From IMG/VR virus record IMGVR_UViG_3300021511_000003, positions 62,001-126,000 of that record: a DNA stretch of 64,000 nt. One strand, given 5' to 3'. Below, piece by piece: positions 1,488-51,250 of the stretch. Positions within the stretch are counted from its first letter, which is position 1. The number at the start of each line of letters is the position of its first letter. The position numbers and the translations under genes were made by a program. Under the pieces are notes generated by a model, which was not told the DNA's origin, ran no database searches, and saw only the letters and a list, made by a program, of their open reading frames with translations.

Positions 1488-2450
1488 TTAAAGTACGAGT
1501 GACAAATATACAGGTTTATTTTTTTGGTAAATTATATCACCACCACCAGATGATGTTTGGATCAATGTTGTTTGAAGTGAGCCAATTTGATCTATAGTTT
1601 TACTGGATTTAATTTTAATATTTTCCATAAGAGGTAATATTTCCTCTCTAAGATGTTGAGAGAATTTTTCTAAAATATATTTAACATCAGATGGTGTTGC
1701 ATCGTTTGGAAATTCTGGCAATAATAATACTTTATTATTCAATTTACCCAATAGTTTTAACCTAACCATTTCTGCTCCATAACATCCACGGATTAAAAGT
1801 TTCCAGTATTCTTCCCAATGCTCACTTGATGGCATGATTTCGATACCAACTGGAACACCTGAAAACATAATGATGGCACCAATTTGATTTTCAACTGGTT
1901 CAAACTCTGCCGCAAAAATTTCGAGTTCTTCTTTAATAGTCGGATTATCATAAAAATATCTCAAATGCGCTGAACCAATATTAACACTTGGAATTCCCCT
2001 AAGCCATTCACTAATTTTTCCCCATAATTTTGAATAATTTTCATGAGATCTGATTGATTGTTTGAGTAATGTTTTTCTAAGGGTAATTGGTAAAATATCA
2101 CTATCTACAACATCATTTAAATAACCACCCTGACTTTCTTCAATACAACATGCATTCTTAAATGATCTTGATTGTTTTTTCATTACAATACCAGAACCAC
2201 TCATTGCATGATCCTGACCTTTAGTACTTCGGACCATTATATTTGTGGGGACAATGGCTTCTGCTGAAGTATCTTTATTTTCAAAGACCATTGTTCCATA
2301 TGAAGTTGTCCGTTTGAATGACAAATTTGTTGGTTTTGCTATATCACCCCTTTCATCCCCCAGTATCGGAATAATGGCCATCTCATCAACAGCCTGAATG
2401 TTACCAATCTCAATTTTATCAAAATTGAGTCTTTTAAAAATTGAAGACAT
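1488..2450 (-). CDS. ARPP-type (ARPP-1/ARPP-2, DUF6569-like) domain protein
   Basis: Motifs MAIIPILG, YG.M.F.N, QDHAM, A.CIE.SQGG, LW..I, FE....QIGAII..G..VGIE..PS..W; adjacent to a vWA gene as recalled for bacterial ARPP-2 operons (not searched). Confidence 0.65.
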   Translation of the reverse strand: MSSIFKRLNFDKIEIGNIQAVDEMAIIPILGDERGDIAKPTNLSFKRTTSYGTMVFENKDTSAEAIVPTNIMVRSTKGQDHAMSGSGIVMKKQSRSFKNACCIEESQGGYLNDVVDSDILPITLRKTLLKQSIRSHENYSKLWGKISEWLRGIPSVNIGSAHLRYFYDNPTIKEELEIFAAEFEPVENQIGAIIMFSGVPVGIEIMPSSEHWEEYWKLLIRGCYGAEMVRLKLLGKLNNKVLLLPEFPNDATPSDVKYILEKFSQHLREEILPLMENIKIKSSKTIDQIGSLQTTLIQTSSGGGDIIYQKNKPVYLSLVL

Positions 2451-2463
2451 TTATGACCTCCTA

Positions 2464-3990
2464 TTATTTCAATTGTTTATTAAATTTATTGATGAGTAAC
2501 TTCTTGACCATTTCACGATTATCAATCATACGATTAAAGATCATTTCGGTTTCCAAATACTTGTAATTCGATACAGGCAACGGGTTTGTATCTGCTGTTA
2601 ACCTTCGTGTTGTACCGATTTTTGCATCTGCAGAAAACACAGGATTTAAATGAATCAGGTTAAATTCATAACCTGACTTTTTAAAATGATTATAGGTATG
2701 TTCAAACATACCTTTTATTGTATTTTCATAACCGTCTGATATAACAATAATAGTCTGGGGTTTGGAGATTACTGCATCTATAAGAGCTTGCCATAGTTTT
2801 GTATCATTGTGTGGAACAATAACACTAATAGGATCTTTCGTTGGAGTTTCCATTCTTTTCCCACCAACATAGATAACATCCTTGACGTTATCCAATATTG
2901 ACAAGATTGATAATGATGTAAGAAATGGATGCATTTTTCTTTCGTTACTACCCATCATGGATCTTGAGGCATCAATAATAACAACACACTCTCCAATATC
3001 AATATGATTCAATTTTTGAGATTGATATTCAATTCCTTCCATGATTTTTTCAATATTGACTGAATCGCCATTGAATAATTTAAAATAAAATGCCTTCCAT
3101 AGATCGTAAATATCTTGATTTTTATAGTTGATAGTTTTTGATTTGGTTGCACCACTACGTTTAACAGCAGATTCCATTTGTAGTGCTTCTCTATCACCCA
3201 TCTTCGCTTGTTCGTAAATTTCAGATATTTTAATATTTACTTTATAAGTATTTCTGAAACCCATTACTGTTCGGTTCGGCATGCCTTTCATCAATTTCTT
3301 GAATCGTTTAACATTGCCATCTTGGGCAGCTGTACGAAGATCCCAATATCTTTCAATTTTTGGGTATCTAACCAAAAGAATATTTTTTGGTGGTGCATGA
3401 TCAAATATATGATAAACCACCGGCATGGATTTGATATTATATCGACCGATTCTTTTGTTAAACAATTCCTCATCACCATTCAGGATTTTAAATACTTCCT
3501 GCTTTCCAAGAGCATGTCTAACCAATTTTTTCAATTTTCTTTTATAGTTAATTGCCAACCCTTCAAGTTCTTGAGTTGAACGGTCGAATATAAACTCAAG
3601 AATAATCTTTCTAGTTCTGGAGTTGTTGACTTTTTTAAAACCTTCTTCACCGGTGAGCATCAAAAGATTCTTCAAAGCTCTTGGTATTTTTTCTTTGGAA
3701 AGATTATATTTGATAACTTTTTGTTCATAGTCGAATGGTAAACCACTCGGGATTAATTCTTTTCCTGTTACACTTTGAGGATTGGCAAGTAACATATGAC
3801 TCATTGCGCCTTTTGAAAATCCAGTTCCCTCAAGTATTGTTGTTAATCCAAATAATGTTCGGTCAAATAAAAACAACTCTTTCCACATTTTGTATACTCG
3901 TTGAAACTGTTGATTTGCTTCTTCATAAAACGCACCTTTCGGAGCAAACTGAAGCATTCCAGAATCAATAGTAAGTGATTTTTCTGTCAT
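2464..3990 (-). CDS. Ro60/TROVE-like helical domain plus C-terminal vWA (MIDAS) protein
   Basis: IIDASRSMMGS (DxSxS), IIVISDGYEN and HLNPVF motifs; basic helical N-terminal ~340 aa; SD AAGGAG favours a start at 3990. Confidence 0.65.
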   Translation of the reverse strand: MTEKSLTIDSGMLQFAPKGAFYEEANQQFQRVYKMWKELFLFDRTLFGLTTILEGTGFSKGAMSHMLLANPQSVTGKELIPSGLPFDYEQKVIKYNLSKEKIPRALKNLLMLTGEEGFKKVNNSRTRKIILEFIFDRSTQELEGLAINYKRKLKKLVRHALGKQEVFKILNGDEELFNKRIGRYNIKSMPVVYHIFDHAPPKNILLVRYPKIERYWDLRTAAQDGNVKRFKKLMKGMPNRTVMGFRNTYKVNIKISEIYEQAKMGDREALQMESAVKRSGATKSKTINYKNQDIYDLWKAFYFKLFNGDSVNIEKIMEGIEYQSQKLNHIDIGECVVIIDASRSMMGSNERKMHPFLTSLSILSILDNVKDVIYVGGKRMETPTKDPISVIVPHNDTKLWQALIDAVISKPQTIIVISDGYENTIKGMFEHTYNHFKKSGYEFNLIHLNPVFSADAKIGTTRRLTADTNPLPVSNYKYLETEMIFNRMIDNREMVKKLLINKFNKQLK

Positions 3991-4081
3991 TTCTATGAAT
4001 CTCCTTTTTTTTAGTTTCAACGTAAGATAATCATAACTAATTTTTTTGGTTGAAAAATAAAAAGCATCTTTGGCCTTTTTG

Positions 4082-4137
4082 TTTCAAATATGACTTATAT
4101 AATATTCGATTTGAAATTATATCAAATCGTCTCGAAA
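4082..4137 (-). ncRNA. Degenerate fifth scaffold module of the RNA array
   Basis: Core TATAAT-TTCA-(8 nt)-ATTATA; weak outer helix TTTCGA/TTTGAAA. Confidence 0.4.
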
Positions 4138-4175
4138 AAATTCTATACCATTTAAACAGTATATTCAAAAAATAA

Positions 4176-4301
4176 TCCTGAAAGTAGAAAATGTAATAGG
4201 TACTTGATAAAGTAAGAATTGAACTTACCGTCTTTTGCGTATAAGGCAAATACCCCACCATTGGGATTTTTTATCTGAAATCACAAATAAGTCTTTCAGG
4301 A
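4176..4301 (-). ncRNA. Scaffold RNA module carrying a tRNA-Ile(UAU)-like cloverleaf (4206-4275)
   Basis: Outer helix TCCTGAAAG/CTTTCAGGA; inner TGTGAT/ATTACA; insert GATAAA/TTTATC stem, D arm TCCC-AATGGT-GGGG, anticodon arm TTTGC-CTTATAC-GCAAA, T arm GTAAG-TTCAATT-CTTAC; no CCA. Confidence 0.8.
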
Positions 4302-4327
4302 AACTGTAAATTGTATAATAAAAAGAA

Positions 4328-4406
4328 ACTAGAAGTTGTATATGTAATATGATGTTTTGGCTTCTTCTCAAAAGAATAAAACTGAAATTACAAAAAGTCT
4401 TCTAGT
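4328..4406 (-). ncRNA. Scaffold RNA module with a short hairpin insert
   Basis: Outer ACTAGAAG/CTTCTAGT; inner TGTAAT-TTCA...ATTACA; insert GTTTT..TTCTT-loop-AAGAA..AAAAC. Confidence 0.7.
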
Positions 4407-4417
4407 GTTAAAATACA

Positions 4418-4548
4418 CCCGAAGTAGTAAGTGTATTAATTTGTCATACCACAGATGGCGTGGTAGAAGGGACTCGAACCCTATACGTTGCTTTATAAGA
4501 GCAGTGCTGAACCAATCAGCGATCAGAAAATACGTCTAAGTCTTCGGG
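4418..4548 (-). ncRNA. Scaffold RNA module carrying a circularly permuted tRNA-Ile(UAU)-like domain
   Basis: Outer CCCGAAG/CTTCGGG; inner GTATT/AATAC; D arm GCTGA-TTGGT-TCAGC, anticodon arm TGCT-CTTATAA-AGCA, T arm AGGG-TTCGAGT-CCCT, then CTACCAC-G-CCA-TCT-GTGGTA. Confidence 0.8.
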
Positions 4549-4560
4549 AAAAATATAAAA

Positions 4561-4619
4561 TGGAGTTATAAATGTAATTGGTTGATTTAACAATAATTTG
4601 AAATTACATAAATTCTCCA
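4561..4619 (-). ncRNA. Minimal scaffold RNA module (first in the array)
   Basis: Outer TGGAG/CTCCA; inner TGTAAT-TTCA...ATTACA; about 20-nt AT-rich insert. Confidence 0.65.
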
Positions 4620-4660
4620 AAATGTTCTTAAACATAATAAATCATTATTCTTATTCAGAT

Positions 4661-4674
4661 ATTAATATATATAG
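4661..4674 (-). promoter_or_regulatory. Putative phage promoter class A (CTATATATATTAAT)
   Basis: Identical 14-mer at four intergenic sites, each oriented toward the downstream gene. Confidence 0.6.
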
Positions 4675-4693
4675 TTATTATATTTTTAAATGA

Positions 4694-4969
4694 TTAAGTA
4701 ACATCTACCATAGCAGGTTTTCTTGTATTATCTAAATCAAAAATAATCTTTTTATTTGAAAAATGATTTGCGGTATTCTTGATGATTTGTTTCATACCTT
4801 GTGGCATAAAATTATCAGTATAATATAATTGAAGTCCATCTTTGAAGCTAAATGCAATACCATCATGTGTTTCATTAACTTCAACTAAATCACTTCTTTT
4901 GATTTCAAGATTCATAGTACCTTTTTTAATGACAATCATTGATTCCTCAGTCATGTTATTCTCCTTCAA
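4694..4969 (-). CDS. Hypothetical protein
   Basis: ORF at the end of the RNAP operon; SD favours a start at MTEES. Confidence 0.7.
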   Translation of the reverse strand: MKENNMTEESMIVIKKGTMNLEIKRSDLVEVNETHDGIAFSFKDGLQLYYTDNFMPQGMKQIIKNTANHFSNKKIIFDLDNTRKPAMVDVT

Positions 4970-5570
4970 TTAATTTCAAGTATATTTCATTATTAAGTTC
5001 TTTTGATTTCTTACAAAACCATTCTGTGATTTTATCTTTATTATATGTTCTTAAAAAATTAGTAATTAACCAAGAAAAGTCTTGAGAATTTAACTGTTCT
5101 TCAATTTCAAAAATAATTTCATTTTGATTTTGTTTACAAATCTTTTCAATATGAAATGAATCCAATTCTGGATCTAGATATGACCATATTTCTATAATAA
5201 AATTTTTATGGTCATATTCAACAAACTCCAAAAATTTTAAGATATTTATAATATCAGATTCGCTATTTGTATTAACGATTATAGATGGTTCATAATTATA
5301 CACTTGCTTAACTCTTTTTAATATTGATTCTGCCAGAACCTGTTTTTGTTCTATTGGGTATTTTATCATATCAGGATATACTGATAAATATTCTTCTTTA
5401 AAATCTGATTTACCAATATTACGAATAATTGTTATAAAGAAATATTCTTTCAATGCTTCTTCTTCAACGGGATACCCCAATTCACTTTCCACTTCTGCAT
5501 CATCATAATCTACTTCTGGCTCTTCAATAGAGTTACCAAGAAGTATTTTTAGATCTTCTGATTCAAACAT
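4956..5570 (-). CDS. Hypothetical acidic protein in the RNAP operon
   Basis: 204-aa ORF coupled to the end of the beta gene. Confidence 0.75.
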   Translation of the reverse strand: MFESEDLKILLGNSIEEPEVDYDDAEVESELGYPVEEEALKEYFFITIIRNIGKSDFKEEYLSVYPDMIKYPIEQKQVLAESILKRVKQVYNYEPSIIVNTNSESDIINILKFLEFVEYDHKNFIIEIWSYLDPELDSFHIEKICKQNQNEIIFEIEEQLNSQDFSWLITNFLRTYNKDKITEWFCKKSKELNNEIYLKLIEGE

Positions 5571-5572
5571 TT

Positions 5573-8500
5573 TTACCTCGTTAACATTAATGATATAAAA
5601 TATGAATTTAATAAATCTTTTGCTGGAGATATTTTTGGTTCTTTATAACCAGCATTGCCATTTTGAATAATCTCTGCCATTATTTTATCTCTTGTTATAT
5701 AATCATCAGATAATGGACCCATAAATTCAGCTAAAACATGTGGACAATTATATGAAATAAAAGAATAAGTATCAAGTTCACCCAGTCTTTGACCTCCATC
5801 ACGTTTTTTTCCACTTGTAGGTTGTGATGTTTTACCTGTTGTTGGACCGGTACCACGTGCATATATTTTCGCTTCGCCAAGATGTTCGAGTTTTGACATA
5901 TACATATAACCAACAGCAACTTCAAAATGGGTTTTAGTATTATATTTAGGCAAGAAAAGTTTATATTTTGTTTTCAAGCCTAATACTTTCAATGATTTTT
6001 TAATCTCAGTATGACCGGGTGCTTTAAATGGTGGTATAATAATTGGATAAAAACCAGTCTTTTTAACCTGGTCAATCATTTTTACATATTGTGTTGTTGT
6101 CAAACTTGATAAATTTCTAACAAGATTTTCTGTTGCTTTTTTATTTGGTGACATATCAAGATTTACAAATACTTGTTTTATGAGTGCAATTGTTTTTGGT
6201 TTTGTCATTGTTGGTAATCGTTTACCTAATTCTCTTGCCATCAATCCACAATACATTTCATATAACTGACCCATATTCATTCTACTTAAAAGACCGAGAG
6301 GATTTAAAATTGTTTCAATGATATCACCGTTAGGAAGTCTTGGCATTAATTCATCGTTTTCAATTAGTGAGATGATTCCCTTATTGCCATACCTATTCGC
6401 TAATTTATCACCAAGTCCAACTCGTAATTCCTGTTCAATTCTAAATCTTACTAATACTCCTTTGATTGTTTCACCTTTGACCGTAAACGATTCTTTTGCT
6501 GGTTTCATTGATTTAAGATTTGTTTTTGTAATCAACTCTTTTAATTGTGGAAATAGTTCTTCATCAACATTAGAATAAACTTCAATATCAACAATTTTTC
6601 CACCAGGACTCTTTTTAATAAATTGTCCAGTAAACATATCAGTTGTTTCATCATCATCGAAACCAATAATATCTTCAATATCACCAAGAGTCTTTCTTAA
6701 TAATGGTTTTCCTTTTTCAATTTCATCACCAATTTCTGCAATATATAAAAGCCTATCATTAGGAGCAATTAATATTTCTTCTTCAATACCATGTAATGAA
6801 GTCAATTTATCCTGTTCTACAACTGATTTACTAATAACTGCACCATCTTCAAAATTATATCCATCATATGGCATAAGAGCGCATAATAACGGTCTTCCAA
6901 GTGAAATTGATCCATTAGACATACATGCACCTTCTGCAATAACATCACCCTGTTTGACGGTTTCACCCACCTTAATCAAAGGGTTAAATACACTTAATGT
7001 ATTTTTTCCAGAACCAGATTTTAAATGAACCGGTGTTATATCAATTATCTTTTTTGTTTTACCACATTGAATTGTTATTAAATCCTTATGAACAGAAGAA
7101 ATTTTACCATTACAAGGAGATTTTTTCACAAAGTTTTTTGATAAAACACCTGTTAATATTGATTCATATCCAGATTGAACAACAGGGGGTTGTGGATTTC
7201 TTAAAGGCAACATTTGTTTTGCCTGATTTGAAAGCATAATAACCCTTGCACCATCTGTATTTTCAAGGAATGGAATCATTGATGTAGTCGTTGAAAGCAT
7301 TCCACTTCCTTCATTATCTGATATATCTTTTGTTGTAAATAAACCTCGTGATGACGATATCAATGCGTCTATGGTTAACTGTTGAACAATTCCAATATTG
7401 TCACTCTCGGATGTATCAAGAGGATCAAGATTTCCAAAATATGAATTATGTAAATTACGAGCATCATTATGAATAGCTCTTTTATCAGGAATACCTCCAA
7501 CCTTTTTACCAGCAGGAGACACTCTTGTCATAGTTGACATTTCTTCAAGAGGATTTGCGTATTCCATATCAACAACTAATTCAGTCATTAAAAAATCACT
7601 TAATACTTTAGTTGGTACTATTGTTAATTTTGCTTCTGTATTGCCTGATAAAACTTGCTCTTTATATACTGTGTAAGCTGCAAGAATTTGTTTTTGTGCT
7701 AAATGGACAAGAACTTCTGAATTTCTAATTCGTTGATTACTAATATCATTTCTTGCAATATAAAACCCATCAACAACTTTTTCTGTCATATATTTCATAA
7801 TCATTTCAAGATCAGTTGGTAATTGTTTATTTAATAATACTTGCTTAGCAACAGGATCAACAATATTTTGAAGATTTGAACTAATAAGAAATGTTGAGTT
7901 TAATCTACCTGATAATTGAATTATTAAATCTTCAAAATATTTATGTGAAGCAAATTCGGCATCACTTTTATATTGTTGTACTTTACCATGAATGAATGAT
8001 TGGCATAGTTGTTTTTGTAAATCTGTTTGGACGTTTTGGAATATAATATATTTTTCGTTGTTAATTTTACATGAGAATTTTTCACTTGGTTTATTATCTG
8101 ACAATATATATTTAATATTATATTTTTTTAAGGTTTCATCAAAACCAAAACTAAACGCAAGCAAAAATATTAATGGCATTTTATAAGACATGAAAGCTTC
8201 AAGATATTTTTCACGTCTTAGCTGTTTAACATATATTCTAAAAACAGAATATGAGCTTTCAAATCTTGATTCACCTGGTGATGGAAATGTAATTGGATTT
8301 TGTACAATTTGATTGATCAAACATTTTTGTTTACCATTCAGTCGAAACACTCCAGTATCAGGATCAATTTTTGGCAACTCCATTTTTATTTCATGTTTGT
8401 TTCCAAATTCATCTGACATATTAATTGTAGCAATTGATAAATCAGATCTCATTACTTCACCCATTCTTTGAGGTTTATCAGCAAGTGTAATCCCTTCAAA

Positions 8501-15511: not shown

Positions 15512-15570
15512 AAACACTTATATCTTTCATTAGTTATTAATATATATAGACATGGAATATATAAGTGTTT
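15512..15570 (-). promoter_or_regulatory. Class A promoter motif (15536-15549) flanked by a perfect 12-bp inverted repeat
   Basis: AAACACTTATAT (15512-15523) and ATATAAGTGTTT (15559-15570). Confidence 0.55.
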
Positions 15571-15590: not shown

Positions 15591-16502
15591 TTATATTTTA
15601 CACACCAAATCTTTTAAGACTTGCTCAAATATTTCTTTTGGTACTGTTGTTGTGCCTGATTGTGTTACTACATAAGCAGCGCATTTATTTGCAAGAATGG
15701 CTGCTTCGTGTATAGAATAATTCATTGATAAACATAAACCCATAACAGCCACAACCGTATCACCGGCACCTGAAACATTGTAAACTTCAACGGGTTCTGA
15801 CATAATTGAATATTCTTTATTATTCAACTTATTATATAAAATCATTCCATGTTTGCCTTTTGTTTCAAGAATAAATTTTACATTTTTTAATGAATATTTA
15901 GATGATAGTTTCATGATTTTCCATTCTTTTTCATTGGGTGTAATCATGTAAGCATCATTATATAAAAAGCCATTAATTGGTTTTGGATCAACAATGATTT
16001 TTGTATTCAGAGTTTTAAGAAATTCCATTAGTTCTTTTGTAATCATTCCTTTTGCATAATCCGAAACTATAATAACATCATATACTTTTCTACAATCTTT
16101 AAGGAAAACTTCAATTGCTCTTTTTGAATCAATTTTCGAGATTGTTTCTCTATCAACTCTTAACATTTGAACTTTACGGTCATCAGCAATAATTCTTTCT
16201 TTTACAATTGTTTGTTTTGAACCGTATGAACATAAATTCTTTGCGCCTATATTATCCAATTCATTAATTATCAACCCCCCATTGATATCATTCGAAATTG
16301 AGGACATACAATCAACTTGTGCTCCGAGTTCTCTAAGATTTCTACAAACATGGCCACAACCTCCCAAAGTATAATATTCTTCTTTAACGTGAACAACAGG
16401 TACAGGAGCTTCTGGGCATATTCTTTCAACTTTACCTATAATATATTTGTCAAGCATTATATCGCCAACAACTAAAACTTTCACATGACCAGTTTCTTTC
16501 AT
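15591..16502 (-). CDS. hldE: D-glycero-D-manno-heptose-7-phosphate kinase (HldE/RfaE domain I, PfkB family)
   Basis: VLVVGDIMLDKY, ERICPEAPVPVV, SDYAKG, VDPK, ITPNEKE, VYNVSGAGDTV. Confidence 0.9.
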   Translation of the reverse strand: MKETGHVKVLVVGDIMLDKYIIGKVERICPEAPVPVVHVKEEYYTLGGCGHVCRNLRELGAQVDCMSSISNDINGGLIINELDNIGAKNLCSYGSKQTIVKERIIADDRKVQMLRVDRETISKIDSKRAIEVFLKDCRKVYDVIIVSDYAKGMITKELMEFLKTLNTKIIVDPKPINGFLYNDAYMITPNEKEWKIMKLSSKYSLKNVKFILETKGKHGMILYNKLNNKEYSIMSEPVEVYNVSGAGDTVVAVMGLCLSMNYSIHEAAILANKCAAYVVTQSGTTTVPKEIFEQVLKDLVCKI

Positions 16503-16566
16503 ATACACCGCCTTTTTAAAATTTTCGTGGCAAAAAAGAGTATCGAACTCATTTTTTGTAAAGTGT

Positions 16567-16645
16567 GAGAGAGGTAATTCCGCTATCCCATAAGGACCGG
16601 TGATTTTGCGTCCTAACCTTGCGGTTAGTTTGCCTTTTTCTCTCT
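16567..16645 (-). promoter_or_regulatory. c-di-GMP-I (GEMM-I) riboswitch aptamer
   Basis: GAGAG-AAAAA-GGCAAAC-TAACC-GCAA-GGTTAG-GACGCAAA-ATCACC-GGTCC-TTAT-GGGATAGC-GGAATTACC-TCTCTC matches the class I consensus, with P1 GAGAG/CTCTC and a GNRA loop. Confidence 0.88.
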
Positions 16646-16683: not shown

Positions 16684-17421
16684 TTACAGTTCATTCAACA
16701 TTTTCTGAATTTCGGCATTTACGAAAGCATTACCTTGCAACCAAGGACGATCTTCTGGACCAGCGGATCCACCGGATATTCCGGTACCACCAGTTGCAAT
16801 TGATGTATCAGAGGCCTTGGCATATGAAAAACCAATACCCCATCCGAATGCTTCAATTTTACGATGGGCACCTTCAGCTTTAAATACAAGCACATTGGCA
16901 CCGTTTTGCATGGCTTTCAGAGCCATTGCTCCAACTAATTGTACTGAGTTGGTTTTCCCGTTTTTGGCAGTACCGTTGATAAAAGCGACATGCGTTCCGG
17001 TGTTTTTAATTCCCTTAATACGATCAGGGTCGATTACAAGCAGGATACGACGATCATTTTTTTCACGTCCATTAACGCATTTTTCGGGGTTCACTTCAGC
17101 ATATGTAATACGGGTCTCCCCCCATTTAGCCATATTTTCAAGGGCACCTTCGGAAAAGACTTTTCCAAATTCGAGAATGTTTTTGATTGTAACGAAATCG
17201 CCATCCGGAGTCGGTGTAGTGAACCATCCGGGTTGACCAGGAATCGGAACGGAACCGGCATTCGGGAAGGCACGGTCAGTAGCTTCGTATGTATTTATAC
17301 TGTGATCATCAATGGATGCAGTAACATCATCGACATTTGCTTCGGATGTTGTATCCGCCATTGCGGGTATATAAAATGCAACAAAAACAAGGCTCATCAT
17401 AATTACAATAATCTTTTTCAT
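16684..17421 (-). CDS. Secreted protein of unknown function
   Basis: Signal peptide MKKIIVIMMSLVFVAFYIPAMA; higher GC than its flanks. Confidence 0.75.
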   Translation of the reverse strand: MKKIIVIMMSLVFVAFYIPAMADTTSEANVDDVTASIDDHSINTYEATDRAFPNAGSVPIPGQPGWFTTPTPDGDFVTIKNILEFGKVFSEGALENMAKWGETRITYAEVNPEKCVNGREKNDRRILLVIDPDRIKGIKNTGTHVAFINGTAKNGKTNSVQLVGAMALKAMQNGANVLVFKAEGAHRKIEAFGWGIGFSYAKASDTSIATGGTGISGGSAGPEDRPWLQGNAFVNAEIQKMLNEL

Positions 17422-17474
17422 AAGATTTAATCTCCTTTTTCATTTGTATGATATTCGTTTTACAATTAGTAAGA

Positions 17475-17513
17475 ATAGAACCCTAAGATTAGAACTCTAT
17501 CTTAGAGTCCTAT
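17475..17513 (-). terminator. Long intergenic hairpin (terminator or mRNA-stabilising)
   Basis: ATAGGACTCTAAGAT/ATCTTAGGGTTCTAT pairs fully only on the minus strand (G-U pairs). Confidence 0.6.
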
Positions 17514-17539
17514 CTTTTAATAATTATCGTTAATGATTA

Positions 17540-18556
17540 TTAGTTCCCTCCTACAACGCCATTGGCAGTTGCATGTGAAGAACCGGAAACGGAAACGTGG
17601 CTTCTGTCATTATGAACACCGATGTCGGCATTCAGAGTGGCATTACCGGATCCGTGAGTTCCACCAACAAAACTGAAGTTAGAAGCTCCACCTGCATAAG
17701 TTCCACCACGAGCAATGACTCCACCAACTCCACCACTACCCTGAACTATGCTGTACTGCATACCATGAGAAGCAAAGGTATTGGCTTCGGTATATGTACG
17801 GGCACTGATACTACGATGTGAACCATAAAAGTCACCGGTTACCATTGTATGACCTTCGACATTGGCACCACCATTGATCCAGTTGATATCTCTTACATAC
17901 CCACGACCACTTTCATAATCATAGTCGGAAGCATAAAACTCTCCCATGGAACCATTTCCACCACCAACCCATGAACCACTTGGATAACCCTCTTCCATTG
18001 CGTTGTGATACTGACTTACCATACCACCAACATAGACGGTGCCTTGAACAACTTCACGATTACCACATTTACCAGAGGCTATACCCCAAGTGTCAGCTTC
18101 ACCATAAAAAGAGGCACCGGCACCGGCACGAGATGTTCTGCTGTAATGATCATTGGTGTATGACCATGCATCAGAATGACTTGTAGCATTCATTCCGCCT
18201 GATTGATCGGCAGGATTGTCAATAAGATCATAACGAGGGACTGGAATCCAGATTCCACAACAAATATGTACCCAACTGGTTCCAACATATTGCAGAGATT
18301 GACCAGCAGCGTTAGCATATGTGGAAACATCCCCACCTGCATAACCTCTGGCAGATGAGTGGGCATCGTCATTATAAGCTCCCGGGTAACCGGAATAGGA
18401 ATTGGAGTTATCATTAGATGGTGCTTCACCGTAGTAATAACCGGTAGCGGTCAAAGGGCCTTCACCTGGAGGGCAATTTCCGCCTGGGCATGCCATAACA
18501 CTACCAACTGCAATTAACGTAATCATAATAAATGCAATAAACAATTTTTTAAACAT
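17540..18556 (-). CDS. Secreted Gly/Ser/Tyr-rich protein
   Basis: Signal peptide ending VMA; low-complexity beta-type composition; GC-rich codons. Confidence 0.75.
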   Translation of the reverse strand: MFKKLFIAFIMITLIAVGSVMACPGGNCPPGEGPLTATGYYYGEAPSNDNSNSYSGYPGAYNDDAHSSARGYAGGDVSTYANAAGQSLQYVGTSWVHICCGIWIPVPRYDLIDNPADQSGGMNATSHSDAWSYTNDHYSRTSRAGAGASFYGEADTWGIASGKCGNREVVQGTVYVGGMVSQYHNAMEEGYPSGSWVGGGNGSMGEFYASDYDYESGRGYVRDINWINGGANVEGHTMVTGDFYGSHRSISARTYTEANTFASHGMQYSIVQGSGGVGGVIARGGTYAGGASNFSFVGGTHGSGNATLNADIGVHNDRSHVSVSGSSHATANGVVGGN

Positions 18557-18609
18557 AATTCAATTCTCCTTTTTCACATGTGATAAAATTAATTAAAATA
18601 GTACGGGTG

Positions 18610-18870
18610 TTATTTAGATATATCTTTTTCTTCTTCAACTTTCAACTTCTGTTGCTCGACGTTTTGCTCTTTTGACGCCAATGGAACAATAACAGCTTGT
18701 TGACCATCTCGAGAAGTGATAACTCTGCTATCTGCCTTTTGTTGTTCGACGGCAGCAAGTTTAAAGGTGTCATAATATCCAATATGTTTATAATTGGATT
18801 CAAGTGCAAAAGCAGGAGCAGTGACCATCAAACACATCAATAAAACAATTAGTATCGATATTATTTTCAT
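18610..18870 (-). CDS. Small secreted protein
   Basis: Signal peptide ending AFA; SD AAGGAG. Confidence 0.7.
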   Translation of the reverse strand: MKIISILIVLLMCLMVTAPAFALESNYKHIGYYDTFKLAAVEQQKADSRVITSRDGQQAVIVPLASKEQNVEQQKLKVEEEKDISK

Positions 18871-18907
18871 TTAAAGTTTCGCTCCTTTTAAAAATGTTTT
18901 AAGTAAT

Positions 18908-19450
18908 TTATTTCTTGTTGTTTATCCCCCTCCTTTCATACTGAAATGGACCAATTATGAAAACTTCAATTCCACCTGATTGAACTGAACCATAAAACAT
19001 GATATTTTCATTATCCTGTTTTATCGGTAAATCAATCGTATAATGCCTATATATTAAATCACTAATTGCCAATCCATTATTTATAAAATCTTCTTTATGG
19101 CTTTTCATTTTTGATTTAATACTATAGTTGATTGAATATTCAACCAAGTTTGGATTGTAGATTTCCATAGTTACCATCACTTTAACAATGTCTTTATTTA
19201 TTACTTGAAGTTTATCCATTGATAAAGTATGTGGGATAAAAATACTTGTCCCGTCTTTGTCAATAACAGTTGAAAAACCAGTGAACCAAAATGTAACCAT
19301 CATATTTGTTTCACCAGATACATCTTTAAGAACGTAGTTCGGATTTGCTATTGGTCTTCCACTATTTAAACGAATGTTATAAACAGGGGCAGCACATGAT
19401 ACCAAAAATATAAGTAACATGACTGGTAACATAAATTTAATTTTTTTCAT
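18908..19450 (-). CDS. Putative lipoprotein
   Basis: Lipobox LVSC. Confidence 0.7.
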   Translation of the reverse strand: MKKIKFMLPVMLLIFLVSCAAPVYNIRLNSGRPIANPNYVLKDVSGETNMMVTFWFTGFSTVIDKDGTSIFIPHTLSMDKLQVINKDIVKVMVTMEIYNPNLVEYSINYSIKSKMKSHKEDFINNGLAISDLIYRHYTIDLPIKQDNENIMFYGSVQSGGIEVFIIGPFQYERRGINNKK

Positions 19451-19531
19451 AACTTTTCCCTTCTATAATAAAAAATATTTAATTTAATTTCTCAAAAATA
19501 AACGTACAATATACAATTATTTTTATTAGTT

Positions 19532-19545
19532 ATTAATATATATAG
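19532..19545 (-). promoter_or_regulatory. Class A promoter motif
   Basis: CTATATATATTAAT upstream of the exported-protein cluster. Confidence 0.6.
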
Positions 19546-33918: not shown

Positions 33919-35724
33919 TTATAAATCACACGATCCTGAAGCACATTTTACATCTCCAACATGTAGTGTATTTTCAACTTCTTTTTTATTTGTTAAATAT
34001 TTACGAACATCTTTCTCACTTATCTTATTTAAAATTTGACCGTCTCTTGAACCATCACGATATACAGTAACTCCTTTGAGATCATAAATATATTCAAGAA
34101 GTAACGTGCTCAATTCTTCTTCACTTGTTTCTTCTGGTAAATTAATAGTTTTACTTACTGATGCATCACAGTATTTTTGACAGGCAACTTGCATTTCAAA
34201 ATGATCTTTTGGTTCAAGATCAAATGAATCAACAAACCAATCAGGAATCTCTTCTCCATTTTCAATGATTTCTTGATATTTTGGATGAATATACATTCTT
34301 TTACTAACTCTATCACGCCTCAACATTGCCTTGGCAAACAGAGGTTCAATTGAGCTGGTTTTATCAGCCAACAATGAAATTGTACCTGTTGGTGCTAATG
34401 CCATTAATGTACAATTTCTAACCCCATATTTTTTAATATCCATTCTTAATTGAGCTGGAAGTTTTCTAATAAAAGAAGCTTTACCATAAGCAATGGGATC
34501 AAATTGTGGAAATGCACCCTTTTCAATTGCTAATTCAACTGATGCTTCATAGACTGTATTACGAATAAATTGCATTAACACTTCAGTCTCTCTCACAGCC
34601 TTTTCTGAACCATATCTAATTTTCTTTGCAAATAGATATTCAGCAAGACCAATAACACCAACACCAACACGTCTGGACTTATGAGCGTTAATATCAATTT
34701 CTTTTAGTACATATTTATTGACTTCAATAACATTATCAAGAAAACGAACAGCAAGTTTTGTTATTTCTTTCAATTTTTTCCAATTTGTATTAACATTACC
34801 CGTAATAAAATTTGGTAAAACTAATGAACCAAGATCGCATACACCATATGGTCCCAATGTAGTTTCACCACACGGATTAGTTCCAATAACTGGTTCAAAG
34901 TAATATGAATTATTTTTTGAAAAGGTAGACCAATTAATTAATCCTGGTTCAGCACATTTAACCATATTATGAACAATTTTATTCCAAATATCTCTAGATT
35001 TAACAGTACTATATGATTTTTGTTTGAATTTAAATGTCCAATTTTTATCAGCTTCAACACACTCTAAAAACTCATTATTAATCATAACTGAAATATTAAA
35101 ATGAGTAAGACTTCCTTTATCAACTGTATCTTTTACAATTTCTCGAATAGATTCTGGAGTATCATCTTTTAACCATTTACTAACATTTGGTTTTAATAAT
35201 TTTGCATCAATAAAGTCTAATAATTCAGGATGCGAAACATCAATATGACCAATCGCAGCGGCTCTTCTACTTCCACCACTTTCAATCATTCTTGATATAT
35301 AATCTGCACCTTTCATAAAACTAACTAAACCAGATGAATGACCACCTTTACCAAAAATTAGATCATTTTTTGGTCTTAGAGGTGAAAAATTTACCCCGAC
35401 TCCACCCCCTTCTGACCATAATGTTAAGGCATCTTTATATAACTGCCCGATTTCTTCAATTGAATCGCCCACAGGAAGATGATAACAATTAAAAAGTGAT
35501 CCTCTTGGTCTTGCACTATTTCTTAAAATTCTACCACCAGGAATGAAATCCATATTATAAATCATTTCACCAAAAGAATCTTCAATTCCTTTTCGTATAT
35601 TTGTTTCTGGTATTGCAATATTTTTGGCAACTCTTTCTGAACAAGTTTCCCAATTTTCACCTTCTAAAAAATATCTACTCTTAGCTATTTCTAAGGCGTT
35701 ATCTGATATTATCATTTTTTTCAT
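33919..35724 (-). CDS. nrdJ: Adenosylcobalamin-dependent (class II) ribonucleotide reductase
   Basis: PGGRIL, LFNCY, GGGVG.NFS, TNPCGE, CDLGS, APTGTIS, SKTINLP, GVTVYRDGSR; no C-terminal YY pair. Confidence 0.88.
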   Translation of the reverse strand: MKKMIISDNALEIAKSRYFLEGENWETCSERVAKNIAIPETNIRKGIEDSFGEMIYNMDFIPGGRILRNSARPRGSLFNCYHLPVGDSIEEIGQLYKDALTLWSEGGGVGVNFSPLRPKNDLIFGKGGHSSGLVSFMKGADYISRMIESGGSRRAAAIGHIDVSHPELLDFIDAKLLKPNVSKWLKDDTPESIREIVKDTVDKGSLTHFNISVMINNEFLECVEADKNWTFKFKQKSYSTVKSRDIWNKIVHNMVKCAEPGLINWSTFSKNNSYYFEPVIGTNPCGETTLGPYGVCDLGSLVLPNFITGNVNTNWKKLKEITKLAVRFLDNVIEVNKYVLKEIDINAHKSRRVGVGVIGLAEYLFAKKIRYGSEKAVRETEVLMQFIRNTVYEASVELAIEKGAFPQFDPIAYGKASFIRKLPAQLRMDIKKYGVRNCTLMALAPTGTISLLADKTSSIEPLFAKAMLRRDRVSKRMYIHPKYQEIIENGEEIPDWFVDSFDLEPKDHFEMQVACQKYCDASVSKTINLPEETSEEELSTLLLEYIYDLKGVTVYRDGSRDGQILNKISEKDVRKYLTNKKEVENTLHVGDVKCASGSCDL

Positions 35725-36734
35725 AGAGGTAGTTCTCCTTTATTACATATTATATTTGCTAATTTGCCAGTTGAACATTCATCTTTATGACCGTATTTAT
35801 AATGGCACTTTTTACATACAGACCATGCTAAATCAGGATCTAATGTAAAGAAAGGTTCAAGTTTTTGTGGACGTTCATGATGAACATAGTCTGCTTTTTT
35901 ACCACAGTATTGACATTTATAGTCATCTCTTTTTAAAACAAATTCTCTGAAAGTTTGATATTCTTCTGAAGTATATGGCTTTTCAATTGATTTGTATGGA
36001 TCTGAACGCAATGCATATAATGGACAGTCATTTTTACATTTATCTGAACAATAAAAATAACATCCATCATTTTGAAGAATTTCAATCCCTCTATTTCTTT
36101 CATATAGTTGAGTTTTTGTTGGAGTAAACCATCCCCCTTGTTCTTTTGAATTTGGACATTTGTGGTTTTTACAATGAACCTGTATTTCTTTTTCTCCAGG
36201 TTTATCTGGGTTGTATCTCATCTCTTCTATTTTTGAAAATAACGGAGATTTTCTTTTTTTATCAGATATAGAATCTAATGATTTTATTCTTATCTTAAAT
36301 CTATGTTTATCAGAAAAAACTTTTCCTTTATTAGATATACTTATCTTTCTTTTATGTTCATCAGATAATTTTTTACCTTTATAATATCCGGGTGTTCCGA
36401 TTCTTTTCAGTTTTAATTTTTCTTTATGTTCGTCAGAAAAAACTCTTCCTTTGTTAGATATACTTATCTTTCTTTTATGTTCATTAGATAATTTTTTGCC
36501 TTTATGTGATATGCTTAATTTTTTTATATGATCTTTTGAAAATTTTTTTCCTGTGTTTGCTTCACTCAATTTCTTTTTTGTATCGAAAGAAATATATTTA
36601 CCCATATTTTTATCACTATTTATTTTTTTCATATTTGGGCATGATGAAGTATTATTTTTACAACACCATTTCCCATTTTTAAATTGATGTTTAGCTTCTT
36701 GCCCACATCCATATTCACAAAGTTGTATAAACAT
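35721..36734 (-). CDS. HNH homing endonuclease with NUMOD3 repeats
   Basis: GKKLS.EHKRKIS repeats; RDDYKCQYCG...HH...CKKCH. Confidence 0.85.
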   Translation of the reverse strand: MFIQLCEYGCGQEAKHQFKNGKWCCKNNTSSCPNMKKINSDKNMGKYISFDTKKKLSEANTGKKFSKDHIKKLSISHKGKKLSNEHKRKISISNKGRVFSDEHKEKLKLKRIGTPGYYKGKKLSDEHKRKISISNKGKVFSDKHRFKIRIKSLDSISDKKRKSPLFSKIEEMRYNPDKPGEKEIQVHCKNHKCPNSKEQGGWFTPTKTQLYERNRGIEILQNDGCYFYCSDKCKNDCPLYALRSDPYKSIEKPYTSEEYQTFREFVLKRDDYKCQYCGKKADYVHHERPQKLEPFFTLDPDLAWSVCKKCHYKYGHKDECSTGKLANIICNKGELPL

Positions 36735-51167: not shown

Positions 51168-51250
51168 TTTGTTCCAAAAACTTTATTCAATTATTAATAT
51201 ATATAGATGGAACATATTAATAAGAATAAAATTTTAACTTTAGGAACAAA
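51168..51250. promoter_or_regulatory. Divergent promoter region at the strand switch
   Basis: Class A motif 51193-51206 (-); class B motifs 51168-51175 (-), 51209-51216 (+) and 51243-51250 (+). Confidence 0.55.

What the first reader, a model, noticed from the sequence alone, without database searches (positions are those of the whole stretch)
4418..4548. Circularly permuted tRNA-Ile(UAU): the 5' acceptor strand lies downstream of the CCA
Seen (minus strand): U8-C9, D arm, anticodon arm with loop CT-TAT-AA, T arm with TTCGAGT, then CTACCAC-G-CCA at canonical 66-76 spacing, a 3-nt linker TCT, and GTGGTA, which pairs with TACCAC. No complementary 5' strand precedes the D arm, so the tRNA is opened near positions 7/8 and both ends feed into the scaffold. 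Established: YrlA has a closed acceptor stem but lacks the anticodon arm; permuted tRNA genes of red algae and some archaea mature through a circular intermediate. Inference: either an uncharged mimic that displays an intact anticodon loop, or a precursor that is excised, ligated and reopened at the CCA loop. I do not recall this permutation in a phage.
Basis: partly seen in the sequence, partly recalled or inferred. Interest (0 to 1): 0.85.

Follow-up and report, generated by a model that had tools for sequence, protein, structure and literature searches.

The report
Permuted tRNA mimic in phage Y-RNA array
The permuted cloverleaf is real and conserved, but it is most likely not a decoding tRNA: it is one unit of a tandem array of tRNA-mimicking small RNAs that sit next to a very divergent Ro60-like protein gene in a jumbo phage, so it looks like a new variant of bacterial Y RNA.

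Summary
On the minus strand, 4548-4418 folds as a closing stem (P1, P2), D arm, anticodon arm, T arm and an acceptor hairpin whose loop starts with G-CCA. The 5' acceptor strand lies 3 nt after the CCA.

It is not an isolated oddity. The same unit occurs in 20 distinct relatives, and all six helices covary. The acceptor stem has at least 9 different sequences, and 18 of 20 relatives keep N-CCA.

The tRNA-Ile(UAU) label does not hold. The anticodon differs between orthologues and often has A34. U8 is not conserved. Seven orthologues lack the acceptor hairpin altogether.

The element is unit 2 of four tandem units that share one conserved scaffold. They sit between a phage promoter-like motif and a 518-aa gene. 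The predicted fold of that protein matches Ro60/Rsr over its full length, and an ARPP-1 gene follows it. Array, Ro-like gene and ARPP-1 are present or absent together.

Distant members of the protein family sit beside YrlA-like RNAs and tRNA arrays. They carry tRNA-like cargo in other permutations.

Best reading: a Y-RNA-like tRNA mimic, a new variant of a known kind. Whether RNase P opens the CCA loop remains untested.

The parts
4660..4674 (-). Promoter-like 15-mer CTATATATATTAATA upstream of the RNA array
   Evidence: Four exact copies lie in the window, all on the minus strand and all intergenic. The motif is conserved upstream of the array in every relative inspected. Its function as a promoter is inferred.
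4562..4618 (-). Unit 0: degenerate scaffold unit (P1 GGAG/CUCC, P2 UGUAAU/AUUACA) with a tiny cargo
   Evidence: CM R1 hit at 4561-4620, 26 bits. Sequence read. In relatives this first unit carries a D-arm-like hairpin.
4418..4548 (-). Unit 1, the finding: scaffold plus a permuted full cloverleaf
   Evidence: CM R1 gives 129 bits. RNAalifold predicts all six helices. In the structure count, 98% of cells are paired and 19 of 33 pairs show compensatory change.
4542..4548 (-). P1 5' strand CCCGAAG. It pairs with 4424-4418 (CUUCGGG).
   Evidence: MFE fold. Five of 8 P1 pairs covary.
4529..4533 (-). P2 5' strand GUAUU. It pairs with 4437-4433 (AAUAC). The conserved junction UUCUGA follows at 4528-4523.
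   Evidence: The motif GAAGACUU..UGUAnUUUCnGA occurs only in this array within the 64 kb.
4506..4520 (-). D arm GCUG-AUUGGUU-CAGC
4488..4504 (-). Anticodon arm. The loop is CUUAUAA and the triplet UAU lies at 4497-4495.
   Evidence: The stem covaries in 4 of 5 pairs. The triplet is not conserved among orthologues.
4468..4482 (-). T arm AGGG-UUCGAGU-CCCU
4445..4467 (-). Closed acceptor hairpin: 3' strand (U)CUACCAC, G73, CCA (4458-4456), linker UCU, then 5' strand GUGGUAU(G)
   Evidence: All 5 modelled pairs covary. N-CCA is kept in 18 of 20 relatives and U at -1 in 17 of 20.
4329..4405 (-). Unit 2: scaffold (P1 CUAGAAG/CUUCUAG, P2 UGUAAU/AUUACA) with a 38-nt cargo that is not tRNA-like
   Evidence: CM R1 hit at 4327-4407, 44 bits. 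Sequence read.
4177..4300 (-). Unit 3: scaffold (P1 CCUGAAAG/CUUUCAGG) around a normal-order tRNA-like body (4275-4205). Its anticodon loop is CUUAUAC and it has no CCA here.
   Evidence: Rfam tRNA 47.5 bits. CM R1 60 bits. ARAGORN finds it only at relaxed settings. Orthologues carry erratic anticodons: aug, auu, aau, uua, uug, uga, ucg and gau.
2464..4020 (-). Ro60/Rsr-like gene (518-aa ORF). The start is probably the ATG at 3990, which follows AAGGAG.
   Evidence: No Pfam, PHROG or PDB sequence hit. The AF2 model has pLDDT 78.5. The top 7 Foldseek PDB hits are all Ro60/Rsr over the full length. BFVD hits include phage Ro-like and TROVE proteins. MIDAS-like DASRSM and SDGYEN motifs are present.
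1488..2450 (-). ARPP-1 domain gene, always next to the Ro-like gene
   Evidence: Pfam PF20208, E 2.7e-19. Synteny. The same pair occurs in a distant huge phage. A natural Ro-like-ARPP fusion protein exists.

Best explanation
The element is unit 1 of a four-unit, polycistronic array of small RNAs. I read these as the Y-RNA-like partners of a phage-encoded, highly divergent Ro60/Rsr-like protein, which is encoded just downstream together with an ARPP-1 enzyme.

Each unit has a constant module: P1, a 7x7 internal loop, P2 and a UUUCWGA junction. The 5' and 3' ends of the unit form this module, and I take it to be the protein-binding platform. Each unit also has a variable apical cargo derived from tRNA.

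In unit 1 the cargo is a complete cloverleaf that should fold into a tRNA-like L. It is wired as a circular permutation. The scaffold enters between nt 7 and 8, and a loop beginning N73-CCA closes the acceptor stem. I propose it works as a tRNA mimic on a Ro-like RNP. It would tether or present a tRNA-recognising factor for RNA surveillance or repair, or to counter tRNA-directed host defence during infection. It does not decode AUA.

A further inferred step (about 40%): host RNase P cuts between U(-1) and G1 of the loop, and 3' exonucleases trim back to CCA. This would give a nicked two-piece RNA with a free CCA-3'OH, held together by P1, P2 and the acceptor stem, as shown for M. smegmatis YrlA.

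Shown here: the sequence, the structure with covariation, the array, the synteny and co-occurrence, and the Ro60-like fold. Inferred: binding to the Ro-like protein, the L-shaped fold, processing and biological role.
For: Structure:
- RNAalifold finds P1, P2, D, anticodon, T and acceptor helices on 20 distinct orthologues without being told the structure.
- 98% of cells are paired. 19 of 33 pairs show double changes. 0 of 500 shuffles reach the observed covariation, and slid controls pair only 40-51% of cells.
- The acceptor stem occurs as at least 9 different complementary sequences.
- N-CCA follows the 3' strand in 18 of 20 relatives. U(-1) is present in 17 of 20.
- G.U outnumbers A.C 31 to 7 in P1 and P2 across 105 units, so the gene strand is the RNA strand.

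Not a decoder:
- Anticodons vary among near-identical bodies and include A34.

Array:
- 114 scaffold units lie in tandem, 4-18 nt apart. There are four in the window and none elsewhere in the 64 kb.

Link to the protein:
- The gene order is RNAP beta, p204, p91, array, Ro-like, ARPP-1, p191.
- Relatives without the Ro-like and ARPP-1 genes have no units.
- The Ro-like fold is supported.
- A Ro-like-ARPP fusion protein exists.
- Distant family members lie beside sub-threshold YrlA matches and a textbook T-AS-D YrlA-type RNA, and beside tRNA arrays.
- The same scaffold carries tRNA-like cargo in other topologies: an unpermuted form with a closed scaffold hairpin at 7/8 in L163, and a form permuted at the variable loop with a CCA loop in L166.

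Precedent:
- YrlA has a closed acceptor stem. M. smegmatis YrlA is cut by RNase P and gains CCA in vivo (PMC4201824; bioRxiv 10.1101/312249).
- TROVE proteins are known in some jumbo phages (PMC7824862).
Against: - The Ro60 assignment rests on a predicted model (TM about 0.47) and on context. No TROVE signal appears at sequence level, even with profiles.
- There are no expression, end-mapping or binding data.
- The constant scaffold motif (RGAAGACUU..UUUCWGA) is not the published YrlA motif GNCGAAN0-1G. No Rfam Y RNA or YrlA model hits the window.
- The acceptor hairpin has been lost repeatedly, in 7 of 27 orthologues. CCA has been lost twice. Neither is therefore essential to the array.
- No PNPase, RtcB or RNA ligase partner was found among 37 window ORFs.
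- The loop in this phage is the shortest in the family (CCA plus 3 nt). That may hinder RNase P.
Confidence: 0.68

Rival explanations
1. It is a closed-loop mimic only. The hairpin is never cut. The CCA in the loop, together with the T arm and the 12-bp stack, is a recognition surface for a protein such as the CCA-adding enzyme, RNase P acting as a bound non-substrate, an elongation factor or a defence nuclease. (This rival concerns only the processing step; it is compatible with the Ro-partner reading.)
For: Most YrlA RNAs are thought to keep a closed acceptor loop (10.1101/312249). The loop here is only 5-7 nt. Distant relatives have closed acceptor hairpins without any CCA (L166 unit a, L165 and L170).
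Against: CCA sits exactly after N73 in 18 of 20 relatives and U at -1 in 17 of 20. These are the marks of an RNase P substrate whose 3' end matures by trimming. M. smegmatis YrlA is cut in vivo (PMC4201824).
Confidence: 0.35
2. It is a genuine circularly permuted tRNA gene. The scaffold is excised, nt 7 is ligated to nt 8, and the CCA loop is opened. The product is a decoding tRNA-Ile(UAU) for this AT-rich phage.
For: The rearranged sequence is called tRNA-Ile(tat) with CCA. Thirteen of 18 rearranged orthologues are called tRNA. GAU, an Ile anticodon, is the commonest triplet.
Against: - Orthologues change the anticodon freely, including A34 forms unusable in bacteria.
- U8 is present in only 13 of 20.
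- The 7-66 position is mismatched.
- There is no bulge-helix-bulge geometry. P2 is separated from the core by single strands of 6-8 and 8-10 nt.
- Seven orthologues lack the acceptor hairpin.
- No ligase was seen nearby.
Confidence: 0.04
3. The scaffold is only a processing or stability device, for example leader-trailer stems cut by RNase III that release tRNA-derived RNAs from a polycistron. On this view the neighbouring Ro-like gene is coincidental synteny.
For: The units are 4-18 nt apart under one promoter-like motif. P1, an internal loop and P2 together make about 20 bp, which resembles phage RNase III sites (from established knowledge of T7 processing signals).
Against: Single-stranded scaffold motifs are conserved across lineages whose Ro-like proteins share only 25% identity. 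Units co-occur strictly with the Ro-like and ARPP-1 genes. The scaffold persists as a closed hairpin inside a tRNA-like RNA in L163, where it cannot serve to excise anything.
Confidence: 0.12
4. The array is a panel of decoys or sponges for host anticodon nucleases or other tRNA-targeting defences, acting independently of the Ro-like protein.
For: The 7-nt anticodon loops are intact while their triplets vary in both unit-1 and unit-3 types. Phage tRNAs are known to counter tRNA-cleaving defences (PMC7824862).
Against: Variation is not concentrated in the anticodon. Near-identical pairs differ as much in the variable and T loops (L152 versus L154). Many units carry no anticodon arm at all.
Confidence: 0.1
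5. It is a chance resemblance: a decayed tRNA pseudogene or an attP remnant with a fortuitous hairpin.
For: The z-score of the single-sequence fold is only -1.5. ARAGORN still% of controls with a shuffled 5' strand.
Against: All helices covary across 20 distinct sequences from many samples. The CCA and the stem are maintained through at least 9 stem variants. No integrase is nearby.
Confidence: 0.01

Closest known systems
YrlA (Y RNA-like A; Rfam RF02553), the tRNA-mimicking Y RNA of bacterial and mycobacteriophage Ro60/Rsr
   Same: Both are encoded beside a Ro60-type gene on the same strand. In both, the RNA ends form a stem and the apical module is a tRNA mimic with D and T arms and an acceptor stem closed by a loop. 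One member is opened by RNase P and ends in CCA (PMC4201824; 10.1101/312249).
   Different: YrlA runs V-T-AS-D, and its own ends form the anticodon stem, so it has no anticodon loop and no encoded CCA. Here the order is D-AC-V-T-AS. The break is at 7/8, the anticodon arm is intact and CCA is encoded in the loop. The Rfam model does not hit. The 5' motif differs. The partner protein is not recognisable as TROVE by sequence.
Deinococcus radiodurans Yrn1 and the b7a-tRNA of RNA-repair operons
   Same: These are Ro- or repair-associated RNAs with tRNA-like D/AC/T order in which a long stem replaces or extends the acceptor stem (PMC4201824; 10.1101/312249). They resemble unit 3 and the hairpin-less unit-1 orthologues.
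   Different: They have no closed acceptor hairpin, no tandem array and no shared scaffold motif.
Circularly permuted tRNA genes of Cyanidioschyzon merolae, some green algae and Thermofilum pendens
   Same: In both, the 3' acceptor strand lies upstream of the 5' acceptor strand, joined by a short linker that has to be opened.
   Different: Those genes mature through BHB cleavage, ligation into a circle, and RNase P/Z, and they yield decoding tRNAs with conserved anticodons. Here there is no BHB, the anticodon is not conserved, CCA is encoded and the context is a Ro-like gene.
Two-piece (permuted) tmRNA of alpha-proteobacteria and cyanobacteria
   Same: The gene order T arm, 3' acceptor strand, CCA, intervening loop, 5' acceptor strand is shared. 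In tmRNA the mature RNA is two base-paired pieces.
   Different: tmRNA has a tag reading frame and pseudoknots and no anticodon arm. ARAGORN finds no tmRNA here.
Ro60/Rsr (TROVE plus vWA) proteins
   Same: p518 gives a full-length fold match to D. radiodurans Rsr and to Xenopus and human Ro60 and to phage Ro-like proteins. It has a C-terminal vWA domain with a MIDAS-like motif. tRNA-like RNAs lie next to it.
   Different: There is no detectable TROVE sequence signal. The family of 559 clusters at 50% identity is constantly paired with, and once fused to, ARPP-1.

Membership tests
Canonical tRNA gene | Contiguous acceptor-D-anticodon-T-acceptor order that tRNA finders can detect | tested here: not met
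   ARAGORN finds 0 genes in the window. Rfam tRNA matches only positions 6-65.
Canonical tRNA gene | Anticodon conserved among orthologues and usable for decoding | tested here: not met
   Orthologues carry GAU, UAU, AUU, AUC, AUA, UGA, UGU, UAG, UGG and others.
Canonical tRNA gene | Core tertiary nucleotides: U8, A14, G18 G19, U54 U55 C56, A58 | tested here: inconclusive
   A14, GG, UUC and A58 are invariant, although the D arm was part of the search pattern. U8 is present in only 13 of 20.
Permuted tRNA genes (C. merolae / T. pendens type) | The 3' part of the tRNA lies upstream of the 5' part, with the acceptor ends joined by a linker | tested here: met
   Only 7-8 nt form the downstream piece.
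Permuted tRNA genes (C. merolae / T. pendens type) | Bulge-helix-bulge motif at the junction of the gene ends, for endonuclease and ligase | tested here: not met
   The flanks form P2 and P1, with conserved 6-8 and 8-10 nt single strands next to the core. No 3-4-3 BHB is present.
Permuted tRNA genes (C. merolae / T. pendens type) | Circular intermediate and a mature decoding tRNA | not testable with these tools
   This needs RT-PCR across a 7/8 junction and aminoacylation assays.
YrlA (RF02553) | Encoded within about 4 kb of a Ro60 orthologue, on the same strand | tested here: met
   The unit ends at 4418 and the Ro-like ORF starts at 4020/3990 on the same strand. The Ro assignment is by fold, not by sequence.
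YrlA (RF02553) | Match to the family covariance model | tested here: not met
   No YrlA or Y RNA hit, even at E<=10, in 3000-6500. There are also none in 9 related loci.
YrlA (RF02553) | Order T arm, closed acceptor stem, D arm, with the anticodon stem formed by the RNA ends and no anticodon loop | tested here: not met
   The order here is D, AC (closed, 7-nt loop), T, closed acceptor. The ends enter at 7/8.
YrlA (RF02553) | GNCGAAN0-1G motif near the 5' end | tested here: inconclusive
   The window has CCCGAAG. The family consensus is RGAAGACUU. It is similar but not the motif.
Y RNA in the broad sense | An RNA of about 80-130 nt whose 5' and 3' ends form a long stem with an internal loop | tested here: met
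   The unit is 131 nt. P1 and P2 covary.
Y RNA in the broad sense | Bound by the Ro60 orthologue | not testable with these tools
   Only co-occurrence is shown.
Two-piece tmRNA | Tag reading frame, pseudoknots and no anticodon arm | tested here: not met
   ARAGORN tmRNA search is negative. An anticodon arm is present.
Ro60/TROVE protein (for the 518-aa neighbour) | Pfam TROVE domain match | tested here: not met
   PDB sequence and profile searches do not hit Ro60.
Ro60/TROVE protein (for the 518-aa neighbour) | Helical-repeat ring plus a C-terminal vWA/MIDAS fold | tested here: met
   The top 7 Foldseek PDB hits are all Ro60/Rsr, 521-557 columns, probability 1.0, TM 0.42-0.47. BFVD gives Ro-like and TROVE proteins. 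DxSxS and SDG motifs are present.

The most novel reading that the evidence does not exclude
RNase P opens the CCA loop, so the phage makes a two-piece, full-cloverleaf tRNA mimic with a free CCA-3'OH and a real anticodon loop, anchored by its extra helix to a Ro-like ring and its ARPP-1 partner. This would be an RNP able to enter tRNA pathways such as charging, the CCA-adding enzyme or anticodon nucleases. It could act as a bait or sensor against tRNA-directed host defence. The same scaffold accepts tRNA modules in at least four circular permutations, which would make this a natural modular display system for tRNA mimics.
Probability: 0.2. Interest if true: 0.85.

Novelty: new variant of a known kind. 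Interest (0 to 1): 0.68.

Why it matters
Y RNAs with tRNA-like modules and phage Ro60 genes are already known. This locus adds four things.

1. A full cloverleaf mimic permuted at position 7/8, with an intact anticodon arm and a genomically encoded CCA in the closing loop. I did not find this topology described for YrlA or for permuted tRNA genes.

2. Tandem arrays of 3-7 units that share one covarying scaffold and swap tRNA-derived cargo. The same cargo occurs in several permutations across lineages.

3. A large Ro60-like protein family of 559 clusters at 50% identity. It is invisible to the Pfam TROVE model. It is constantly paired with, and once fused to, the uncharacterised ARPP-1 enzyme. 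It occurs in jumbo and huge phages and in Myxococcota, Planctomycetota, Cyanobacteria and others, next to tRNA arrays.

4. A concrete test system. It can address what the tRNA-like domain of Y RNAs is for, and whether RNase P opening is a general step.

Tried and rejected
- Similarity search: blastn of 4000-5000 against 50,697 phage records gave no match.
- Annotation of the 518-aa neighbour gave nothing from Pfam, PHROGs, PDB sequence search or PDB profile searches. Only the predicted fold was informative.
- Promoter reading of the repeated motif: I first read GAAGACUU..UGUAAUUUCnGA as a promoter in front of each tRNA-like gene. I rejected this for three reasons. It occurs only in this array. 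Both of its helical parts covary with downstream partners. The units are only 4-18 nt apart.
- Apparent L010 homologue: the MAFFT alignment suggested a homologue of the CCA hairpin in L010. Folding showed that stretch is the P1 of the next unit.
- attP or tRNA-fragment remnant: no integrase is nearby, and covariation excludes it.
- Ribozyme or known RNA family for the scaffold: an Rfam E-value scan found only tRNA.
- RNA ligase, RtcB, PNK or CCA-adding enzyme in the window: none among the 37 ORFs scanned.
- Relatives of the L163 protein in viral contigs: the search returned only L163 itself.
- Diversifying selection on the anticodon: not claimed. Close pairs differ as much in other loops.
- The papers PMC5062991 and PMC10870794 were not held.
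Full report
1. OBSERVATION

The window is part of a 223-kb viral contig, IMGVR_UViG_3300021511_000003 (window position = contig position minus 62000). It has about 29% G+C. It encodes RNA polymerase beta- and beta'-like subunits, ribonucleotide reductase, RecA and a baseplate protein, so it is a jumbo phage.

In order it contains U8-C9, a D arm, an anticodon arm with loop CUUAUAA, a T arm with UUCGAGU, then CUACCAC-G-CCA, a UCU linker and GUGGUAU. No 5' acceptor strand precedes the D arm.

ARAGORN sees no tRNA in the native window. The Rfam tRNA model aligns only positions 6-65 (29.4 bits). After moving GUGGUAU to the front, ARAGORN calls a 74-nt tRNA-Ile(tat) ending in CCA. That test is only moderately specific, because 55 of 500 versions with a shuffled 5' strand are still called.

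The stated limits are the two strands of a closing stem, CCCGAAG/CUUCGGG. The MFE fold reproduces this stem together with all four arms. The single-sequence z-score is only -1.5.

Six-bp hairpins with N-CCA at the loop start occur 10 times in the window on both strands (shuffles 3.1). One abutting a T arm exactly is roughly a 1-in-10,000 event.

2. A REPEATED SCAFFOLD

The sequence GAAGACUU-N3-UGUAnUUUCnGA in front of the D arm recurs in front of a second tRNA-like element at 4275-4205 (Rfam 47.5 bits) and in between. It occurs nowhere else in the 64 kb.

Each copy has downstream partners, so each unit has this layout:
- P1, 7-9 bp, whose inner part is GAAG/CUUC
- a 7x7 internal loop
- P2, UGUAAU/AUUACA-like
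- the junction UUUCWGA
- the cargo
- P2'
- P1'

The window has four tandem units:
- 4618-4562: tiny cargo
- 4548-4418: the finding
- 4405-4329: 38-nt cargo
- 4300-4177: a normal-order tRNA-like body

A covariance model built from unit-1 orthologues finds exactly these four and nothing else in the window.

I first took the motif for a promoter and dropped that reading for two reasons. The helical parts covary with their partners, and the units are only 4-18 nt apart. A separate 15-mer, CTATATATATTAATA, lies upstream of the array. It occurs four times in the window, always intergenic on the minus strand, and it precedes the array in all relatives. It is the better promoter candidate.

3. RELATIVES AND COVARIATION

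Loci related through the RNA polymerase gene and two pattern scans gave 27 distinct unit-1 orthologues. Twenty of them carry a hairpin after the T arm.

RNAalifold, without being given a structure, predicts P1, P2, D, anticodon, T and acceptor helices.

On the model-guided alignment:
- 98% of cells pair.
- 19 of 33 pairs show changes on both sides.
- 0 of 500 shuffles reach the observed covariation.
- Slid controls pair only 40-51% of cells.
- All five modelled acceptor pairs covary.

That alignment was fitted to the structure. The raw sequences show the same thing directly. The acceptor stem occurs as CUACCAC/GUGGUA, UUAGCAC/GUGCU, UUGGUA/UACCAA, UUGACAU/AUGUCAA, UUGUUC/GAACAA, AUGGUU/AACCAU, UUGGC/GCCAA, UUGCC/GGCAA, ACACAU/AUGUGU and UUACAU/AUGUA.

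Further regularities:
- N-CCA follows the 3' strand immediately in 18 of 20.
- The nucleotide before the 5' strand is U in 17 of 20 and can pair with N73.
- The T stem (4 bp) plus the acceptor (8 positions) make the canonical 12-layer stack.

In P1 and P2 of 105 distinct units, G.U outnumbers A.C 31 to 7, so the RNA is made from the gene strand.

4. NOT A DECODING tRNA

The anticodon triplet changes among orthologues with nearly the same body. GAU is the commonest. UAU (this phage), AUU, AUC, AUA, UGA, UGU, UAG, UGG and UUG also occur. L152, L154 and L160 differ only slightly yet read AUC, AUU and GAU.

A34 anticodons are not used by bacterial decoders apart from Arg-ACG (established knowledge). 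The normal-order tRNA-like bodies of unit 3 behave the same way: aug, auu, aau, uua, uug, uga, ucg and gau.

U8 is present in 13 of 20. Seven orthologues lack the acceptor hairpin cleanly.

On a tree of the neighbouring protein, the hairpin-plus-CCA state sits in at least four clades. These are interleaved with hairpin-less and CCA-less lineages. The feature is therefore old, maintained and dispensable.

5. THE NEIGHBOURS

The gene order is RNAP beta, p204, p91, RNA array, p518, p320 (ARPP-1), p191. Relatives that go straight from p91 to p191 lack p518, ARPP-1 and every scaffold unit. Every array locus that extends far enough has p518.

p518 has no Pfam, PHROG or PDB sequence match. Its alignment shows a MIDAS-like DASRSM...SDGYEN signature.

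An AlphaFold model (pLDDT 78.5) gives these fold matches:
- The seven best PDB matches are D. radiodurans Rsr, Xenopus Ro and human Ro60. They cover the full length with probability 1.0 and TM 0.42-0.47. The next hits fall to TM about 0.2.
- In BFVD it matches a Gordonia phage 'Ro-like RNA binding protein' and a 'TROVE domain-containing protein'.

A profile search finds 559 clusters of this family. None of 18 distant members tested hits TROVE. One is a natural fusion with ARPP-1.

ARPP is a predicted enzyme acting on ribose-containing substrates (PMC9503650). TROVE proteins with a tRNA-like partner have been noted in a few jumbo phages (PMC7824862).

6. DISTANT LINEAGES TIE IT TO Y RNAs AND SHOW OTHER PERMUTATIONS

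Huge phage LR756500.1 (Ro-like protein 25% identical, followed by ARPP-1):
- Two upstream tRNA-like RNAs have the 5' acceptor strand first.
- A closed scaffold hairpin carrying the same motif is inserted between nt 7 and 8.
- Then come D, AC, T and the 3' strand-G-CCA.
- Deleting the insert gives an ARAGORN tRNA.
- This is the unpermuted isomer of unit 1.

L166:
- One unit has the order T arm, acceptor hairpin UUCAAGC-U-CCA-AUCUU-GCUUGAA, D arm, anticodon arm. It is permuted at the variable loop.
- Its fold has z = -3.6.
- It gives a sub-threshold Rfam YrlA hit.

Other units (L166 unit a, L165, L170) have a T arm plus a closed acceptor hairpin without CCA.

In cellular genomes the protein family (21-27% identity; Myxococcota, Planctomycetota, Cyanobacteria, Actinomycetota, Bacteroidales and archaeal MAGs) lies next to dense same-strand tRNA arrays and sub-threshold YrlA matches. 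One of these reads as a textbook T-AS-D YrlA.

7. HOW IT MOST LIKELY WORKS

Shown here:
- a 131-nt RNA structure under purifying selection
- its place in an array
- strict co-occurrence with a Ro60-fold protein and ARPP-1

Inferred:
- The P1-loop-P2 module is the platform for the Ro-like protein. In Y RNAs the stem formed by the ends binds Ro60 (PMC4201824).
- The cloverleaf folds as a tRNA-like L, since the G18/G19 and U54-U55-C56 partners are invariant.
- The RNP uses the mimic to engage tRNA-recognising factors during infection.

The 12-bp stack, N73-CCA and U(-1) are the determinants of a bacterial RNase P substrate whose 3' end is matured by trimming (established knowledge). M. smegmatis YrlA is cut by RNase P in its acceptor loop and ends in CCA in vivo (PMC4201824). 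I therefore give about 40% to the loop being opened, producing a two-piece RNA with a free CCA end. Otherwise it stays closed, like most YrlA RNAs (10.1101/312249).

The excision-ligation route to a decoding tRNA-Ile is unlikely (about 4%).

8. COMPARISON AND VERDICT

The element works like YrlA but fails three of that family's defining features: arm order, absence of an anticodon loop, and a model match. It is not a permuted tRNA gene in the algal or archaeal sense, because it has no BHB and no conserved anticodon. It is not a tmRNA.

I file it as a new variant of Ro-associated Y RNA. It has a new permutation point, an encoded CCA loop, an array organisation and a previously unrecognised Ro60-like/ARPP-1 partner pair.

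Nothing here is experimental. Expression, ends and binding remain to be shown.

Noticed in passing
window 16569-16643 (-), with ORF 15591-16508 (-): A c-di-GMP-I-GGC riboswitch aptamer (Rfam 65.2 bits, above gathering) sits directly upstream of a PfkB-family sugar kinase gene in this phage.
   Followed up: partly
window 4660-4674, 15535-15549, 19531-19545, 51192-51206 (all -): The exact 15-mer CTATATATATTAATA occurs four times, always intergenic and on the strand of the downstream genes. It is a likely phage promoter consensus.
   Followed up: partly
window 17000-19000: This stretch has 39-42% G+C in a 27-31% genome. It holds ORFs 16684-17421 and 17540-18556, which have no Pfam match, and may have been acquired horizontally.
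   Followed up: no
L004 9333-9407; L002 9620-11155: In L004 the unit-3 tRNA-like body has anticodon UUA, which ARAGORN reports as 'tRNA-Stop'. In L002 the Ro-like ORF contains an in-frame stop. I did not test whether this reflects recoding, decay or sequencing error.
   Followed up: no
L010 9150-9330; L028 (minus strand) about 165-250; L142 2555-2636: G+C-rich, strongly structured inserts lie between scaffold units in some relatives. The L010 region folds with z = -5.0. No Rfam family matches.
   Followed up: no
L143 1164-1295, L010 9331-9463, L142 2325-2466, L157 6642-6773: A conserved unit type of about 132 nt has a multi-hairpin cargo in which a 7-bp hairpin is followed by UGCCA. It may be another minihelix-CCA mimic.
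   Followed up: no
L168 (Minicystis rosea CP016211.1, 8259007-8266320), L176, L169, L174: Bacterial homologues of the Ro-like gene are embedded in arrays of 6 to more than 25 same-strand tRNA genes. L170 also carries a group I intron at 5422-5640.
   Followed up: partly
window 35721-36734 (-), 33919-35724 (-), 36743-37594 (-): A NUMOD3 homing-endonuclease-like ORF abuts the ribonucleotide reductase large-subunit gene. A queuosine-salvage (Q_salvage) family gene lies next to it.
   Followed up: no
window 4037-4261 (-), 4225-4371 (-), 4357-4539 (+): Short mechanical ORFs overlap the RNA units. The 74-aa one has matches only in copies of the source contig, so these ORFs are most likely not genes.
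   Followed up: partly
L150 1520-1770 (same sequence as L028): This relative has two copies of the promoter-like 15-mer, one before unit 1 and one before unit 2. Array transcription may therefore be subdivided in some phages.
   Followed up: no
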